Source: Octopus bimaculoides
Taxonomy: Eukaryota
NCBI RefSeq assembly: GCF_001194135.2
Contig: NC_068984.1
Coordinates: 80,296,442 to 80,328,965, forward strand
Length of the DNA: 32,524 nucleotides
Direction: 5' to 3'
Part shown: piece by piece, positions 3,746 to 31,330 of the stretch
Position numbering within the stretch: the first letter of the stretch is position 1
Layout of the letters: each line of letters begins with the position of its first letter
The notes under the pieces: model-generated
What the model saw: only the letters and a program-made list of their open reading frames with translations
Told to the model about the DNA's origin: nothing
Databases searched by the model: none
Translations under genes and position numbers: made by a program

Positions 3746-4409
3746 NNNNNNNNNNNNNNNNNNNNNNNNNNNNNNNNNNNNNNNNNNNNNNNNNNNNNNN
3801 NNNNNNNNNNNNNNNNNNNNNNNNNNNNNNNNNNNNNNNNNNNNNNNNNNNNNNNNNNNNNNNNNNNNNNNNNNNNNNNNNNNNNNNNNNNNNNNNNNNN
3901 NNNNNNNNNNNNNNNNNNNNNNNNNNNNNNNNNNNNNNNNNNNNNNNNNNNNNNNNNNNNNNNNNNNNNNNNNNNNNNNNNNNNNNNNNNNNNNNNNNNN
4001 NNNNNNNNNNNNNNNNNNNNNNNNNNNNNNNNNNNNNNNNNNNNNNNNNNNNNNNNNNNNNNNNNNNNNNNNNNNNNNNNNNNNNNNNNNNNNNNNNNNN
4101 NNNNNNNNNNNNNNNNNNNNNNNNNNNNNNNNNNNNNNNNNNNNNNNNNNNNNNNNNNNNNNNNNNNNNNNNNNNNNNNNNNNNNNNNNNNNNNNNNNNN
4201 NNNNNNNNNNNNNNNNNNNNNNNNNNNNNNNNNNNNNNNNNNNNNNNNNNNNNNNNNGACGCCTCCAATACTAACAGGCTCAAAGAGATGTACCAAGCAA
4301 TATTCCCAGCACTTCCCTGTCACGAACAGGAGGAGGTGAACCCAGAAATATACGACAAATTCTACAAAGGACACCCCAATGTGCAACAACCAAACCAAAC
4401 CGTTTGACA

Positions 4410-4850
4410 GGAAGCCCGGTGAAATTGCTCAGGATCTGGTTCGTCCAGACCTCCAAACAGAGAGAAACTGGGGTGAGGTCACGAACAGGGTGGCTAATCT
4501 CACCCAGAAATGGGCTGAGAGGAAGCTGTCTCTGAAAGGGAGGGCGGAGGTGCGAATGTCTTTATCGCACCGCGAGGAAAGTTTACCGAGAAAATATATC
4601 CATAGTATCTCACCATTAATAGTTAAAAACGATTTTATTGAAGAAAAAAAAAAAAAACGAGAGAAAAACTCAAGTTGAAAAATGACGGCAAAAAAATCGT
4701 ATGATGAACTTTCCCTGCGGTAAATTGATGGCGGTAAACTTACCAGGCATGTTCTTAAAGAAGAGAAAGGATACATAGGCCAATGTGGTCCTAAATGTAT
4801 GATATGTGGCTGAAATCCTTTTGAACATGCGTTTGTTCAAGTGGGACTAA
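4410..4850 (+). mobile_element. Decayed Tx1/L1-clade LINE ORF2 fragment (post-RT region and zf-RVT-like motif)
   Basis: From 4419 reads VKLLRIWF, then after a 1-nt frameshift PDLQTERNWGEVTNRVANLTQKWAERKLSLKGRAEV. This fits the L1/Tx1 post-RT pattern LGxWFG...NW...W..R.LSLKGR. 4787-4840 reads GPKCMICG*NPFEHAFVQ, a CxxC...H zinc-knuckle remnant. Confidence 0.65.
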
Positions 4851-10965: not shown

Positions 10966-11148
10966 CTGACCACCACTTGACAACCGGTGTTGGTGGGTTT
11001 ACGTCTTCGTTAATTATCGGTTCGGCAAAAGAGACCGACAGAATAGTACCAAGCTAAAAGAAACTGAGTACTGGAGTTGATTCGTTTGACTAAAATATTC
11101 GTCAAGTCAGTGCCCCTGTATGTCTGTAGTTTAATGACTGAAACAAGT
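10966..11148 (+). mobile_element. SINE family A, 3' half
   Basis: cttgacaaccggtgttggtgggtttacgtc, ggttcggcaaaagagaccga and tail aatgactgaaacaagt. Confidence 0.85.
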
Positions 11149-11735
11149 CATGATGTTCTTTCTGCTCAGTGGTCAGCAGGCGGGGGACAAACTTGGCAGA
11201 GACACGCTGCATGTTCGATTCAGACGCTAAGATTGCCTGCACAGACCCGTACGACAGACTAACAACATCAACAATGTCATTGATTGTCCTCTGGCGATCC
11301 TAAATGCACAAGCTGATGAATTCTCTCCATATTTCCGGGGATGACGCTCGTAGCAGGTCTTAGAGATCACTCATCGTCTTCCAGGGACGTTCTTCTGCTC
11401 TTGAAGCGCCCGTGCCACTCGAAACATTGCGTACAACCCATTGCTTCATCACCGTAAGCTTACTGAAATATACTCAGTGTCTCTGCAGCAGACTTCCCAA
11501 GTTTAACGCAAAATTTCACATGGATTTTTGTCCCTGTCCATGACAAAATCGCAGACTACAGCATACACGTAATCACAAAACACAAATTTCACAACTTGTG
11601 ATGTAAACACAATGATGTTACTCAGCACACTACTTCATAAAGGTCACTGCTAATTCTCACTGAGCACGCAACCGTATGCTGCCATCTGTTGGCGCACTAC
11701 AGAACTAGTCCAGGAACTTTTTGATACCAAGTCGT
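11149..11735 (-). mobile_element. Mariner (irritans-related, HTH_48-type N-terminus) 5' half: TIR and pseudogenised transposase
   Basis: TIR-like ...tatcaaaaagttcctggac at 11735-11710 and ATG at 11541. With frameshifts and stops it reads VKFCVKLGKSAAETLSIF, AYGDEAMGCTQCFEWHGRFKSRRTSLEDDE, DRQRTINDIVDVVSLSYGSVQAIL and MQRVSAKFVPRLLTTEQKEHH (WVP-region motif KFVPRLL). Confidence 0.9.
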
Positions 11736-15732: not shown

Positions 15733-16113
15733 GTAAGAAGGAAAAAGAAAGACAACGTCCCACACTCTCTCACTAGCTCTAATGCTGTTCTCTTACACCA
15801 CCATTCTATCTTCCTCTATAATTACTACTAAACAATGACGAGAACACAAACACAAACTATGCAAGGAAAATCTATATCTATTTTTACTTCGCATGCTTTA
15901 CGATTTTATCACCTGCCTGTCGAGGCAAGGTATTGTATAATATAACGGTAAAAATAAATATTTCCTTAAAACTTCATGCATTGTTCATTTTCACATCTTA
16001 CATGTCGTTACAAATTAATTCCAGCCGTTACACAAAATTAATCATCATCGTTACATATATATGTGTGTGTGTGTATGTGTATATATAACCAGCTCCAAAT
16101 GTTCCTTGTATCG

Positions 16114-16871
16114 TCCTTTTGTCTTCCTTTTCTGTCCATTATGTTTTCGCCCAGTTTTCGTCTATTTTCCCCTTTTCTATCTAACTTTCGAAATATTCAT
16201 TGCAGCGCAACGCACCTCCGTTTGTTTACTTAACACTAAAAAAAATTCCCTGAATATTTGTAGTGCAACTCTTAACACTTTCTTCTCTCTTTTCTTTTTT
16301 TTGTTTTCCCTCTTCTCCTTAATTGCCTCCCTTGTACCCTGTCCTCTCTCTTTCCTTCTCTCTTACTCTTCTGCTTCTCTCTCTTTTCATGTCTTAGTCC
16401 TCCCACCACTCTTCCTCTCTCCTACCACGTAACCGGTGTCCAGTCAAAGCGCGTCGTTTTTGTTTCTTTTTTGGCCTGCTGCTGACTAAACCAGACACCA
16501 TTTGTGTTCTGTCCTTCAAGGACTTTTTCCATTTCTTTGCGCTAGCTCACTACGTCTGTCTTGATAGCTGAAAAGGCTTTTTTCTGTTTGTATTGAATTG
16601 TTTTAGTACTGTATACGTATGATTATTCCTACAAATTATTGTGCAGCAGTAAGGCATTTTCCATTGCATATTTACCATTCCTTGTCTGTCATATCTTATC
16701 GTTATTTTTTATTGTACATTCAATGTTATTTTATCCTCTCCTCGCACACATTCGTCAGCCTTTTCCTGTAGTTGTATGTTCTTGCGCTCCCGTTGATAAC
16801 AGTGATGTTAGTTTTAAATAGCGTGAACCCACTGAGACGTCTCGGAAACCGACTGATGAGAAAATCAGCAG
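16114..16871 (-). mobile_element. Possible very decayed RTE-like LINE 3' fragment bracketed by an 18-bp direct repeat
   Basis: The minus strand around 16400-16570 gives, with frameshifts, SYQDR..ELAQRNG, KW/WFS, SSRP and TKTTRFDWTP..ERGR, resembling the RTE C-terminus. A purine-rich 3'UTR-like tract follows. Flanked by CAAATGTTCCTTGTATCG at 16096 and 16872. Confidence 0.3.
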
Positions 16872-17744
16872 CAAATGTTCCTTGTATCGCTGAAAAATGC
16901 ATTTTGATACGTGAGGAAAGATGCTTCGAGTACATAAAAGAACTTGGTGAAAATATAATAACGAAACGGATATGGTTGGTGGAGACACCACCCCCTAGAA
17001 CTGATTATTTGCAGTTGTTAAAGACGGACGTAGCAATGATTAATGGAAGAAAGATAACGCGAGTGTTTGGATTTTTTGAGTTACAAAACCGTTAAAATGT
17101 TTACATGACGTTGAACGTAAAAGTGGACATTGCGCCTCATTTTTTTATTCTTGCATATTATCATTTTATTTTAATTACCCCGNNNNNNNNNNNNNNNNNN
17201 NNNNNNNNNNNNNNNNNNNNNNNNNNNNNNNNNNNNNNNNNNNNNNNNNNNNNNNNNNNNNNNNNNNNNNNNNNNNNNNNNNNNNNNNNNNNNNNNNNNN
17301 NNNNNNNNNNNNNNNNNNNNNNNNNNNNNNNNNNNNNNNNNNNNNNNNNNNNNNNNNNNNNNNNNNNNNNNNNNNNNNNNNNNNNNNNNNNNNNNNNNNN
17401 NNNNNNNNNNNNNNNNNNNNNNNNNNNNNNNNNNNNNNNNNNNNNNNNNNNNNNNNNNNNNNNNNNNNNNNNNNNNNNNNNNNNNNNNNNNNNNNNNNNN
17501 NNNNNNNNNNNNNNNNNNNNNNNNNNNNNNNNNNNNNNNNNNNNNNNNNNNNNNNNNNNNNNNNNNNNNNNNNNNNNNNNNNNNNNNNNNNNNNNNNNNN
17601 NNNNNNNNNNNNNNNNNNNNNNNNNNNNNNNNNNNNNNNNNNNNNNNNNNNNNNNNNNNNNNNNNNNNNNNNNNNNNNNNNNNNNNNNNNNNNNNNNNNN
17701 NNNNNNNNNNNNNNNNNNNNNNNNNNNNNNNNNNNNNNNNNNNN

Positions 17745-29666: not shown

Positions 29667-30346
29667 TCTATATATATCATATTGGTGAATAAATGTAAAT
29701 TAATGCTGGTAAAATAAACATATAGCCTTCTTTCAGTGCATGTCAATGTTAGCCAGATTTTAGATGGAATAGCAATGGAAATGTCGGCAATCATCTTACC
29801 AGTACTTTCGTTCAAAATTGAAAAGGCTGTAAAGGAATGTTATACTTCTCCGTAAGACAAGGTTTACAGTCTCTGTAACAATAAGTTTGTAAGACGCACA
29901 TTCTATAATGGATTAGTCGATCTTGGGTGTTTTCAAGAAAGTTCCATATCTTTGCTTATTTCAGGCCTTTCTACAGAGACGAGATCTATTCACAACCATG
30001 TAGATAATGATGAATAGGCGAATGTGTGGTGCCTTTATTAACGTTTTGAGGACTTGAACAACTCAAATCTTGATGTGGTATTGAGTAATGATATCGGTGA
30101 GAATGACGCTATAAACCAGTGGTTCTCAACTTGGGTACATATGACAGTGTGTGTGTGTGTGGGGGGGTGTCCATGTAAGATTTTTGTGACTAAAATTTAT
30201 GTGAAAATAATTATTTATACTTCTACAATATACAAAATAGTTCAACAATTTTTTAAGATAAAATTCTTAATAATATCTACTTATAAAAATACTATAGAAT
30301 TTACATTATTTACAATTGACGGATATTTGTCCTCATCTTTGTTGTT

Positions 30347-30392
30347 AACACAACGTTTCGGCTGATATATCCTCCAGCCTTTACTAGGTGTC
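30347..30392 (-). ncRNA. Minimal type I hammerhead motif, left arm (core mutated to CUAGUAA; stem I intact)
   Basis: Minus strand: GACAC-CTAGTAA-A-GGCTG-gaggatatat-CAGCC-GAAA-CGT-T-GTGTT. Confidence 0.6.
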
Positions 30393-30466
30393 TTGGGGAA
30401 ATTTCGAACCTGGATTCTCATTCCTGAAGTATTTTTTGATGTTGTTGTTGTTATTATTATTATTAT

Positions 30467-30534
30467 GCTGCGTAGTGGTTAAGAGCGCGGGCTACTAACT
30501 CCAAGATTCCGAGTTCGATTCCAGGCAGTGACCT
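30467..30534 (+). promoter_or_regulatory. tRNA-derived Pol III internal promoter (A and B boxes)
   Basis: gcgtagtggttaag (A-box, 30470-30483), anticodon-loop-like ctactaa, gagttcgattcc (B-box, 30511-30522). Cloverleaf stems are imperfect and the 5' acceptor strand is truncated. Confidence 0.8.
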
Positions 30535-30535
30535 A

Positions 30536-30570
<35 letters not shown>

Positions 30571-30633
30571 TAACAATAACAACAACATCGAAAATACTTT
30601 AGGAATGAGAACCCAGGTTCGAAATTTCCCCAA

Positions 30634-30679
30634 GACACCTGATGAAGGCTGGAGGGTATATCAGCCGAAACGTTGTTCT
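30634..30679 (+). ncRNA. Minimal type I (Penelope-type) hammerhead ribozyme, right arm, intact catalytic core
   Basis: GACAC-CTGATGA(30639-45)-A-GGCTG/CAGCC 5-bp stem II-GAAA(30667-70)-CGT-T. Loopless palindromic ACGU stem III; predicted GUU cleavage after 30674. Stem I is weakened (GTTCT instead of GTGTT). Confidence 0.8.
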
Positions 30680-31059
30680 AACAACAAACAAGATGAGGAC
30701 AAATATCCATCAATTGTAAATAATGTACATAATGCCTCATCTCTTAAACATAGAACTGAAAAATACTATAGAATGTTTTAAACATCGAATGCTTATGAGG
30801 GAAAAGAGAAAGTCAGAGAGGATGAAGTTAGTTTGTGGGCCAGATGTAAAAGCATTGCTCCATTGTGGCCTCAGCTTGAGCTTTATGGTGTATCAGAAAT
30901 TGTTGGAGTGATATTTGTTCCGGCCGTGAGGAGAAAGGAACGATCATTGAGATGCGGTCCCCACAATGTTAAGGATGTGCTTTTATCGCTGGTGATAGTG
31001 AAGCGCAACATTTTTGAGTGCTCTGATTGCAAACACATCTGATAAATCTTTGTACAAAT

Positions 31060-31181
31060 GCGTATGTATGTGTATATACATTTATGTATATATGTATAGT
31101 TATATACATTTATGTATACGTATGTGTATATGTATACATACATGTATATATATATATATACATACATGTATATATATATAT

Positions 31182-31222
<41 letters not shown>

Positions 31223-31330
31223 TACACACGCATACATTTTTATATGCACATACGTCTATATACCTATATATGCACACATACTCACACTGATACACATGTC
31301 TCTCTCTATATAAACATGTATGTATGCATA
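31060..31330. repeat. Compound (TA)/(TACA)/(TATG) microsatellite
   Basis: Directly visible; source of several YI-rich pseudo-ORFs. Confidence 0.95.

What the first reader, a model, noticed from the sequence alone, without database searches (positions are those of the whole stretch)
30301..30758. Hammerhead-bearing, tRNA-headed fold-back SINE inserted as one unit (16-bp TSD)
Seen: a perfect 16-bp TSD brackets an inverted arm, a tRNA-like A/B-box head plus (AAT)n, a sense arm and a 31-nt tail; both arms carry a hammerhead motif. Established: TSDs of this length indicate target-primed retrotransposition, not cut-and-paste MITE insertion (TA or 8-9 bp). Minimal hammerheads and inverted terminal copies are typical of Penelope-like elements (PLEs), and Schistosoma SM-alpha is a tRNA-derived SINE with a hammerhead. 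Inference: this is a non-autonomous Pol III retro-element mobilised by PLE machinery. I do not know of this exact architecture being described in cephalopods, but it could be an already catalogued octopus SINE whose ribozyme was overlooked.
Basis: partly seen in the sequence, partly recalled or inferred. Interest (0 to 1): 0.9.

Follow-up and report, generated by a model that had tools for sequence, protein, structure and literature searches.

The report
Octopus hammerhead SINE, Penelope-style insertion
A 458-bp mobile element in an octopus genome combines a tRNA-like head with a small hammerhead-ribozyme module, and its insertion scars match those left by Penelope-like retrotransposons; this is a new member of a known kind of element, not a new kind.

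Summary
The anatomy is real. A perfect 16-bp target-site duplication brackets an inverted arm, a 68-nt tRNA-like head, an (AAT)n/(AAC)n linker, a sense arm and a tail of about 30 nt.

The source is Octopus bimaculoides: the only named protein matches are from that species.

The "hammerhead" is a Penelope-type minimal hammerhead with no helix III loop. Rfam misses it, even in intact relatives. The right arm keeps the core but has lost helix I. The left arm keeps helices I and II but has a dead core (CUAGUAA). The 12-copy consensus restores the whole motif, with some covariation.

Other copies show the same head-linker-arm unit, and head-to-head inverted dimers recur with different junctions. 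In three composite insertions the inverted copy ends 29-35 nt short of the forward copy. Published work gives this "tail" as a Penelope-specific signature, caused by priming on both DNA strands from two start sites.

The arm is 82% identical over 68 nt to 114-129-nt tandem hammerhead repeats that are very abundant in another, unidentified genome.

Not shown: the autonomous partner, Pol III transcription, or cleavage.

Verdict: a tRNA-headed, Penelope-dependent SINE, analogous to Schistosoma Sm-alpha. Interest is moderate.

The parts
30285..30300 (.). Left target-site duplication, AAAAATACTATAGAAT
   Evidence: Exact 16/16 match with 30759-30774 (family D3). No 16-mer pair at this spacing in 200 simulated windows.
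30301..30440 (-). Inverted, 5'-truncated and tail-less copy of the arm. It ends at the position matching about 30727-30729 of the sense copy.
   Evidence: blastn and pairwise alignment with 30587-30727: 138 nt, 10 substitutions, K2P 0.078.
30347..30392 (-). Left-arm hammerhead remnant. Helix I GACAC/GUGUU, helix II GGCUG/CAGCC and GAAACGU-U are intact, but the core has mutated to CUAGUAA.
   Evidence: Alignment A3. Covariance model R1 scores it 83.1 bits.
30441..30466 (-). Reverse complement of the A-rich linker, (TTG)n(TTA)n. It belongs to the inverted copy.
   Evidence: The repeats flanking the head are inverted, not direct, which argues against a nested insertion of the head.
30467..30534 (+). 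tRNA-like head with an A-box-like TAGTGGTTAAGAG and a B-box-like GAGTTCGATTCC, starting 35 nt apart
   Evidence: Pattern hit 30473-30522, 0 of 100 shuffles. Homologous heads occur in L004 (two) and L015 (two). ARAGORN and the Rfam tRNA model are negative.
30535..30586 (+). A-rich linker, (AAT)n(AAC)n, between head and arm
   Evidence: An equivalent A-rich AAT/AAC linker is present in L001, L004, L008, L011 and L015.
30587..30727 (+). Sense arm, the hammerhead-bearing 3' module. It includes a second B-box-like GGTTCGAAATTTCC just upstream of the ribozyme.
   Evidence: 73-78% identical to arms in L001, L004, L008, L011, L015 and L017. 82% identical over 68 nt to the L009 tandem unit.
30634..30679 (+). 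Right-arm minimal type I hammerhead. Helix I 5' strand 30634-30638; CUGAUGA 30639-30645; extra A 30646; helix II 30647-30651 with 30662-30666; GAAA 30667-30670; CGU 30671-30673; U17 30674, with predicted cleavage after it; degraded helix I 3' strand 30675-30679.
   Evidence: The only descriptor hit in the window, 0.003 expected. R1 scores it 87.6 bits.
30728..30758 (+). 3' tail (about 29-31 nt, CATAATGCCTCATCTCTTAAACATAGAACTG region), present only on the sense copy
   Evidence: Absent from the left arm. Conserved in other copies: P0001, P0013 and P0023 at protein level, L008, and the L010 terminal unit TATAATCAAACCTCATCTCATAGATTCAG.
30759..30774 (.). Right target-site duplication
30776..30779 (+). 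First TTTT on the sense strand, a candidate Pol III terminator. There is none in 30467-30758.
   Evidence: Read directly from the sequence. This is inference only.

Best explanation
The element is one copy of a dispersed, non-coding SINE-like family of octopus. Its unit of about 290 nt has four parts: a tRNA-related head with Pol III A and B boxes, an A-rich (AAT/AAC)n linker, an arm of about 140 nt, and a tail of about 30 nt. The arm carries a Penelope-type minimal hammerhead.

The arm and tail most likely imitate the 3' or pseudo-LTR region of a Penelope-like element (PLE). That would let the PLE reverse transcriptase and GIY-YIG endonuclease copy the SINE RNA.

Proposed insertion mechanism. 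The enzyme cut both DNA strands 16 bp apart and primed cDNA synthesis from both.
- Bottom-strand synthesis started at the distal RT start site. It therefore includes the tail, and it ran to the 5' end of the head.
- Top-strand synthesis started about 30 nt further in, so it has no tail. It stopped at the linker/head boundary.
- Joining the two cDNAs head to head gave the fold-back. Repair of the staggered cuts gave the 16-bp duplication.

The fold-back would therefore be made anew at each insertion and is not part of the transcribed master copy.

Shown: the single-unit insertion, family membership, head-arm linkage, the motif and its conservation, and the recurrent asymmetric inverted architecture.

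Inferred: PLE as the mobiliser, Pol III transcription, ribozyme activity, and an age of roughly 10-15 My. The age comes from K2P 0.078 between arms, using the Albertin et al. calibration of JC 0.09 for about 25 My as quoted in PMC13282606.

In this copy both ribozymes have decayed and are probably inactive.
For: Single event:
- A perfect 16-bp duplication brackets the whole composite.
- The microsatellites flanking the head are inverted, not direct.
- The arms differ by 7%, so this is not an assembly artefact. A perfect 16-bp duplication is still expected about 30% of the time at that divergence.

Family:
- The arm translation matches 154 short spurious ORFs. Two are from O. bimaculoides, and P0001 covers arm plus tail.
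- DNA copies L001, L004, L008, L011, L015 and L017 are 73-78% identical to the arm.
- Head, linker and arm occur in the same order in L004 and in both L015 copies.

Hammerhead:
- There is one descriptor hit against 0.003 expected.
- The 12-copy consensus is GACAC|CTGATGA|A|GGCTG...CAGCC|GAAA|CGT|T|GTGnT.
- 77.8% of cells pair, against at most 51% when the partner is slid. Four pairs show changes on both sides: helix I C-G to U-A in L011 and L010; helix II U-A to C-G in L009 and L010; helix II C-G to G-C in L004.
- All four PLE minimal-hammerhead hallmarks are present.

PLE signature:
- The literature describes an inverted 5'-truncated copy and a 30-40-bp tail at one end.
- It also reports cleavage and extension of both strands, and two RT start sites that delimit the tail. 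[quoted passage not shown]
- The tail-less inverted copy is seen here and in L009 and L019. Those two end at the same CCTTAATGA/G but have different inner junctions.
- L004 and L011 are head-to-head dimers with yet other junctions.
- The L009 composite has a 13-bp duplication with 2 transitions.

Plausible partners: PLEs are present and recently active in Octopus.
Against: - No autonomous PLE sharing the arm or tail was recovered. The ORFs near the related loci are LINE-like (RTE-type by my reading), not PLE. No octopus PLE sequence could be examined.
- The Rfam hammerhead models do not match. This holds even for the 98%-identical intact tandem units, so the motif rests on a descriptor, conservation and modest covariation (12-15 of 500 shuffles reach the observed values).
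- The head is not recognised as a tRNA by ARAGORN or Rfam.
- Neither arm has a complete ribozyme.
- Published in-vitro work found that hammerhead cleavage is not needed for PLE insertion, so the role of the motif is unknown.
- Most comparison copies come from unidentified organisms (Logan runs SRR118693xx; ENA ERZ21867824; GCA_052426985.1).
- Only three O. bimaculoides loci are known, and two of those only at protein level.
Confidence: 0.72

Rival explanations
1. A LINE-mobilised SINE (partner RTE, CR1 or Dong-R4, all abundant in octopus). Its 5' inverted copy arose by twin priming, or by snap-back of the first-strand cDNA on itself with the head as the hairpin loop.
For: - A long duplication fits any target-primed reverse transcription.
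- L1-type twin priming is known to give 5' inversions (my own knowledge).
- LINE-like ORFs lie near the related loci, and RTE, CR1 and Dong-R4 are the active LINEs in Octopus.
- The single-copy head sits at the centre, as a snap-back model predicts.
Against: - Twin priming inverts a different, upstream part of the template. It does not duplicate the same 3' region.
- Neither model predicts that the inverted copy ends precisely about 30-35 nt short of the 3' end in three independent composites.
- Neither predicts two classes of 3' end across the family.
- There is no poly(A) or LINE-type 3' microsatellite.
- The module carries a PLE-type minimal hammerhead.
- In L004 both heads are present, so the head is not simply a hairpin loop.
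Confidence: 0.12
2. The composite arose in two steps. Either two independent SINE insertions landed in opposite orientation, or a post-insertion palindromic DNA duplication (replication template switch) copied the arm.
For: - The arms differ by 7-10%, so they need not have been identical at one time.
- In L015 the two oppositely oriented copies are separated by about 330 nt of unrelated DNA, so they may be independent insertions.
Against: - The 16-bp duplication brackets the composite, and neither half has its own.
- The outer end of the inverted copy abuts the duplication exactly.
- The same asymmetric architecture recurs in L004, L009, L011 and L019.
- Nine of ten arm differences are transitions, as ordinary decay after a single origin would give.
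Confidence: 0.07
3. A fold-back DNA transposon or MITE with long terminal inverted repeats that happened to capture a tRNA-like sequence in its loop.
For: - Inverted arms of about 165 bp form a near-perfect hairpin (-259 kcal/mol, z = -26.8).
- The only significant Rfam hit is a miRNA-precursor-like hairpin, which MITEs often give.
Against: - The termini are not inverted repeats. A tail of about 30 nt separates the right arm from the duplication.
- A 16-bp duplication is longer than those I know for cut-and-paste superfamilies (my own knowledge, not tested here).
- Other copies exist as a single arm with a head, or with other junctions.
- The relatives form direct tandem arrays.
Confidence: 0.03
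4. The whole fold-back is the transcribed master and is copied as such at every transposition.
For: Inverted dimers are seen in most loci where the upstream side is visible.
Against: - The inner junction differs in every case: at the linker/head boundary here; both heads present in L004; part of the head in L011; inside the hammerhead in L009; 8 nt upstream of the core in L019.
- A Pol III transcript starting in the head would not contain the left arm.
- L017 shows a simple copy.
Confidence: 0.04

Closest known systems
Schistosoma Sm-alpha / Sj-alpha SINE-like retroposons
   Same: These are tRNA-derived, high-copy SINE-like elements that carry a type I hammerhead. Sm-alpha is derived from tRNA-Gln (PMC2770079).
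   Different: - As far as I know, Sm-alpha carries a canonical type I hammerhead that Rfam-type searches detect. Here the motif is the minimal PLE type with no helix III loop.
- The heads and bodies are unrelated in sequence.
- The A-rich microsatellite linker and the fold-back insertion form are not features I know for Sm-alpha (from memory, not tested).
Penelope-like elements (pseudo-LTR with min-HHR; Cervera & De la Pena 2014; Craig et al. 2021; Frangieh et al. 2024)
   Same: - Minimal hammerhead with an extra nucleotide after A9, the G10.1-C11.1 pair, a palindromic ACGU and a short helix I.
- An inverted 5'-truncated copy at the 5' end.
- A 30-40-bp tail at one end.
- Pairs of minimal hammerheads 100-700 bp apart on opposite strands were already noted in Schistosoma.
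   Different: There is no RT or GIY-YIG ORF, and the unit is only about 290 nt. It has a tRNA-like Pol III head, which PLEs lack. No direct tandem (pseudo-LTR) is present in this copy.
Metazoan non-LTR retrozymes (Cervera & de la Pena 2020; Li, Clavereau & Pollet 2026 preprint)
   Same: These are non-autonomous, non-coding, AT-rich hammerhead repeats thought to derive from PLE pseudo-LTRs, with duplications longer than 4 bp. The relatives found here (L009, L010, L019) are short tandem arrays of 114-129-nt units, each with a hammerhead.
   Different: - Retrozymes are defined by tandem units of about 170-400 nt with canonical type I hammerheads, and by circular RNA.
- The octopus copy is dispersed, with one sense unit and a tRNA-like head.
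- The relatives' units are shorter than described retrozymes and carry the minimal motif.
Classical octopus and cephalopod SINEs (OK, OR1, OR2; Ceph-SINEs)
   Same: tRNA-derived SINEs in cephalopods (cited).
   Different: No paper in the searched library links an octopus SINE to a hammerhead.

Membership tests
PLE-type minimal hammerhead (min-HHR) | Catalytic core C3-U-G-A-N-G-A9 ... G12-A-A-A15.1 | tested here: met
   Right arm: CUGAUGA ... GAAA. The family consensus agrees. The left arm fails, with CUAGUAA.
PLE-type minimal hammerhead (min-HHR) | [quoted passage not shown] | tested here: met
   A at 30646. A22 is present in 11 of 12 aligned copies. The hallmark is listed.
PLE-type minimal hammerhead (min-HHR) | Helix II closed by G10.1-C11.1 | tested here: met
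   GGCUG/CAGCC in both arms, 5 bp plus a G-U. The G-C closing pair is present in 8 of 12 copies.
PLE-type minimal hammerhead (min-HHR) | No helix III loop; palindromic 15.2-16.2; U16.1-H17 cleavage site | tested here: met
   GAA-ACGU-U in both arms. The A-U pair is present in 12 of 12 copies and the C-G pair in 8 of 12, with 2 U-G.
PLE-type minimal hammerhead (min-HHR) | Helix I of 4-5 bp | tested here: inconclusive
   The left arm has 5 bp (GACAC/GUGUU). The right arm has only 2 bp. Helix I is 71.7% paired across copies, with C-G to U-A changes.
PLE-type minimal hammerhead (min-HHR) | Self-cleavage, as a dimer | not testable with these tools
   Needs in-vitro transcription. The Rfam hammerhead models give no hit, even on intact relatives.
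PLE-mediated insertion | Inverted 5'-truncated copy adjacent to the 5' end | tested here: met
   30301-30466. It recurs in L004, L009, L011 and L019.
PLE-mediated insertion | Optional 30-40-bp tail at one end only (two RT start sites) | tested here: met
   The tail is 29-31 nt here, just at the lower edge of the range. It is about 35 nt in L009 and L019. Two classes of 3' end are seen across copies.
PLE-mediated insertion | An autonomous PLE (RT plus GIY-YIG) sharing the 3' or pseudo-LTR sequence | not tested
   No octopus PLE sequence could be retrieved. No PLE ORF was found in the window or the loci.
tRNA-derived SINE | Internal Pol III A and B boxes at tRNA-like spacing in the 5' head | tested here: met
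   Pattern hit 30473-30522, 0 of 100 shuffles. The boxes are conserved in four other heads.
tRNA-derived SINE | Head recognisable as a tRNA (cloverleaf or parent species) | tested here: not met
   ARAGORN finds no genes. The Rfam tRNA model gives no hit at E<=10.
tRNA-derived SINE | Short, non-coding, dispersed multi-copy family with target-site duplications | tested here: met
   The copy number in O. bimaculoides was not measured.
Non-LTR retrozyme | Tandem units, each with a type I hammerhead | tested here: not met
   The window has no direct tandem. The relatives L009, L010 and L019 do.
MITE / fold-back DNA transposon | Inverted repeats at the extreme termini and a short, fixed duplication | tested here: not met
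   A tail of about 30 nt breaks the symmetry, and the duplication is 16 bp.

The most novel reading that the evidence does not exclude
The arm and tail form a deeply conserved recognition module for PLE enzymes, minimal hammerhead included. This module defines a previously unnamed SINE superfamily shared between octopus and at least one other, unidentified animal genome, where it has thousands of copies. Because PLE enzymes prime on both strands, insertions of these SINEs often create a ready-made RNA hairpin of about 150 bp. The family, and PLE-mobilised SINEs in general, could then be a systematic source of the unusually abundant long dsRNA and ADAR hyper-editing substrates reported for O. 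bimaculoides (PMC5625713).
Probability: 0.2. Interest if true: 0.7.

Novelty: new member of a known kind. Interest (0 to 1): 0.5.

Why it matters
SINEs make up about 12% of octopus genomes, and most families are listed as "unclassified".

If this family depends on Penelope-like elements, it gives three things:
- A concrete example of a SINE mobilised by a Penelope-like element rather than a LINE. A partner for the family could then be sought.
- A natural, easily scored read-out of the dual-strand, two-start-site insertion mechanism. So far that mechanism has been shown only in vitro, for a lizard element.
- A mechanism that creates long hairpins at insertion, in a lineage known for extreme RNA editing.

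It also shows that minimal hammerheads go unseen by the standard Rfam scan run here, so they could easily be overlooked.

Tried and rejected
- **Rfam scans.** I ran gathering and permissive thresholds on the window and the loci. No hammerhead or tRNA hit appeared. The only significant hit (MIR2606) reflects the long hairpin.
- **tRNA search.** ARAGORN found nothing.
- **More copies in the window.** blastn and a covariance model found none.
- **Public collection scans.** Exact and degenerate pattern scans of the metagenome, viral and prokaryote-genome collections gave 0 hits.
- **O. bimaculoides DNA for other copies.**
  - The dystrobrevin gene holding an exonised copy spans 132 kb, so no DNA was returned.
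  - P0001 is not on record.
- **Pfam.** Scans of window ORFs gave nothing. My impression of mariner-like and LINE-like fragments in the window is therefore untested.
- **PLE ORFs near related loci.** Only LINE-like ORFs were found.
- **Source organisms.** I could not identify the organisms behind SRR118693xx, ERZ21867824 or GCA_052426985.1.
- **Literature.** String searches for the element's sequences found no paper. The SINEBase supplements are not held.
- **Nested insertion.** I rejected insertion of a short head-plus-(AAT)n SINE into a palindrome. The flanking microsatellites are inverted, not direct, and head-linker-arm is a constant unit elsewhere.
Full report
**1. The observation**

- The 16-mer AAAAATACTATAGAAT occurs at 30285-30300 and again at 30759-30774.
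  - Only three non-repetitive direct repeats of 14 nt or more lie 200-1000 bp apart in the whole window.
  - No 16-mer pair arose in 200 simulated windows.
- Between the two copies lie, in order:
  - an inverted arm with an inverted (TTG)n(TTA)n run, 30301-30466;
  - a 68-nt GC-richer centre, 30467-30534;
  - (AAT)n(AAC)n, 30535-30586;
  - the sense arm, 30587-30727;
  - a segment of 29-31 nt, 30728-30758, that has no counterpart on the left.
- Outside the microsatellite the arms align over 138 nt, with 9 transitions, 1 transversion and one 3-nt indel (K2P 0.078).
  - Arms that differ this much are not an assembly artefact.
  - At this divergence a still-perfect 16-bp duplication is expected about 30% of the time.
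- The window is a draft scaffold with eight N gaps. It holds no second copy of the head, arm or tail.

**2. The source**

A translation of the arm found only two proteins in the word-indexed search, and both are from Octopus bimaculoides.
- One is a 51-residue "uncharacterized protein" that reads through arm and tail at 84% identity.
- The other is a predicted dystrobrevin-beta isoform whose N-terminus contains a piece of the arm.

So the family has at least three loci in that species.

**3. The hammerhead**

Rfam finds no hammerhead, even at E<=10. Read by hand, the motif is not a classical hammerhead. [quoted passage not shown] They list four hallmarks that were not built into their search descriptor:
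- the G10.1-C11.1 pair;
- a palindromic 15.2-16.2, with no helix III loop;
- a short helix I of 4-5 bp.

The right arm reads GACAC|CUGAUGA|A|GGCUG-loop-CAGCC|GAA|ACGU|U, followed by GUUCU. All hallmarks are present except helix I, which has decayed to 2 bp.

The left arm, read on its own strand, keeps helix I (GACAC/GUGUU), helix II and ACGU-U. Its core is CUAGUAA, which changes three conserved core positions.

A descriptor for core + extra nucleotide + helix II + GAAA matches once in the window, at 30639. The expectation is 0.003 per window, and no simulated window gave the full motif with the palindrome.

**4. Relatives, and the family consensus**

An exhaustive profile search with the 63-residue arm translation found 154 short, evidently spurious ORFs. 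They fall into two groups.

*Octopus-like copies.* These come from Logan assemblies of runs SRR11869384-94, whose organism I could not identify.
- The DNA copies are L001, L004, L008, L011, L015 and L017.
- They are 73-78% identical to the arm.

*A very abundant second family.* These come from ENA assembly ERZ21867824 and from GCA_052426985.1, and at least 3,976 ORFs match at E<=1e-5.
- The homologous unit forms short tandem arrays of 129 nt (L009, L019) or 114 nt (L010).
- The octopus arm is 82% identical to the L009 unit over 68 nt (E = 8e-15).

*The consensus.*
- The 66-nt hammerhead region aligns without gaps in 12 copies.
- The consensus is a complete minimal hammerhead.
- By outgroup comparison, CUGAUGA and GUGUU were the states at insertion, so the element was inserted with an intact motif.

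*Pairing and covariation.*
- 77.8% of cells pair in register, against 15-51% when partners are slid.
- Four pairs show changes on both sides:
  - helix I C-G to U-A, in L011 and in L010;
  - helix II U-A to C-G, in the tandem family;
  - helix II C-G to G-C, in L004.
- 12-15 of 500 shuffles reach the observed covariation. This support is moderate, not overwhelming.

*Rfam on the relatives.* Rfam also misses the intact, 98%-identical tandem units. Its silence therefore says little about this variant.

**5. The head**

The centre carries TAGTGGTTAAGAG and GAGTTCGATTCC, starting 35 nt apart. This combined A-box/B-box pattern is unique in the window and absent from 100 shuffles.

Homologous heads stand upstream of the linker and arm, in the same order, in L004 (two copies) and L015 (two copies). 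L017 and the tandem family have different tRNA-like heads. Head-arm linkage is therefore a family property and not a chance juxtaposition.

ARAGORN and the Rfam tRNA model do not accept any of these heads. "tRNA-derived" thus rests on the promoter boxes alone.

The sense strand from head to tail has no TTTT, and the first one lies 17 nt past the element, at 30776-30779. This fits Pol III read-out but is weak evidence.

**6. The insertion architecture**

Craig et al. (2021) describe PLE insertions as often carrying an inverted 5'-truncated copy at the 5' end, and a 30-40-bp "tail" at one end only.

Frangieh et al. (2024) studied a purified lizard PLE protein. They reported three things:
- It cleaves and extends both DNA strands.
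- It starts reverse transcription at two adjacent internal sites.

The octopus element fits this exactly. The inverted copy ends 29-31 nt short of the sense copy.

The same asymmetry recurs in the tandem family. In L009 and L019 a full minus-strand copy (head plus body) ends at CCTTAATGA/G, about 35 nt short. It abuts, head to head, a plus-strand 5'-truncated tandem array that does carry the terminal sequence. In L010 only the last unit carries a 29-nt tail, and that tail is homologous to the octopus tail.

Among octopus-like copies the 3' ends fall into two classes, with and without the tail.

Head-to-head dimers also occur in L004 and L011. The inner junction differs in every case. The fold-back is therefore regenerated at each insertion and not inherited from a master copy.

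The L009 composite has its own 13-bp duplication with two transitions, lying directly at both ends.

**7. Mechanism, and what remains inferred**

The best reading has four steps:
1. A Pol III-type transcript (head-linker-arm-tail) is recognised through its PLE-like 3' module.
2. Staggered cuts are made 16 bp apart.
3. cDNA synthesis is primed from both strands, at the two start sites.
4. The two cDNAs are joined head to head.

I could not retrieve an octopus PLE to test for a shared 3' end. PLEs are present and recently active in Octopus vulgaris (31 families, 336 recent insertions). Transcription and cleavage are untested. Published in-vitro data suggest that cleavage is not needed for insertion, so the hammerhead may be retained as part of the recognition module or for RNA processing.

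**8. Rivals**

- A MITE is excluded by the asymmetric terminus and the 16-bp duplication.
- Two-step origins are unlikely. The duplication brackets the composite, and the asymmetric architecture recurs.
- A LINE partner with twin priming or cDNA snap-back cannot be excluded without the genome. It does not predict the precise tail asymmetry or the PLE-type ribozyme.

**9. Comparison with known elements, and novelty**

[quoted passage not shown] Also close are the animal non-LTR retrozymes, now argued to be PLE derivatives.

The octopus element differs from these in four ways:
- it carries the minimal PLE-type motif;
- it has an A-rich microsatellite linker;
- it is dispersed, not tandem;
- it shows the PLE insertion scars very clearly.

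No paper in the searched library connects an octopus SINE with a hammerhead. The family may nevertheless sit among the roughly 900 "unclassified SINE" families of octopus repeat libraries. I rate it a new member of a known kind.

**10. A consequence worth testing**

As RNA, the element folds into a near-perfect hairpin with stems of about 165 bp (-259 kcal/mol, z = -26.8).

O. bimaculoides has an exceptionally high density of loci able to form long dsRNA, and the strongest hyper-editing signal among the 19 species studied. In the lizard, the massively edited LINE is Penelope.

PLE-type insertion of SINEs could therefore be a built-in source of ADAR substrates. This is speculation, and it can be tested with existing RNA-seq data.

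Noticed in passing
window 16087-16113 and 16863-16889: A 27-nt direct repeat (24/27, with the exact 18-mer CAAATGTTCCTTGTATCG) lies 776 bp apart. It brackets about 750 bp of CT-rich sequence with no inverted repeats. It may be a long target-site duplication of another retro-insertion.
   Followed up: partly
P0002 (O. bimaculoides dystrobrevin beta isoform X1, GCA_001194135.2): The N-terminus of this predicted 94-residue isoform (GEGWRVYQPKCCVNNKQDEDKYPSK) is a translated piece of the same SINE arm. A copy has therefore been exonised, or mis-annotated, in a gene model spanning 132 kb.
   Followed up: partly
L009 10026-10382, L010 10116-10498, L019 295-690: An unidentified genome (ENA ERZ21867824; also GCA_052426985.1) holds thousands of copies of a related tRNA-headed element. 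Its hammerhead unit forms short tandem arrays of 114-129 nt. That is shorter than the 170-400-nt retrozymes described so far.
   Followed up: partly
L010 10083-10117 and 10527-10545: The L010 array is flanked by AAAATTCATTTA(T)AATT on both sides, a candidate duplication of about 17 bp with one indel. An odd 15-nt palindromic piece (TGAATTTTTCATCTT) sits at the left junction.
   Followed up: no
window 30590-30778 (+) and 30284-30478 (-): Both arms are open in the same reading frame (101 and 65 codons). Gene callers have therefore produced at least 154 spurious 'protein' clusters from this repeat family in public databases.
   Followed up: yes
window 11105-11299 (-) and 4340-4675 (+): These ORF fragments look to me like a mariner transposase N-terminus and a LINE RT C-terminal region. 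Pfam gave no hit, so this is unconfirmed.
   Followed up: partly
window 31042-31294: A long imperfect (TATG/TATA/TACA)n low-complexity palindromic tract lies about 270 bp downstream of the element.
   Followed up: no
L009 2031-2576; L010 948-1427 and 18230-19153 (-): LINE-like RT and C-terminal ORFs (RTE-type by my reading, not tested with Pfam) lie near the tandem-family loci. No PLE ORF was seen.
   Followed up: partly
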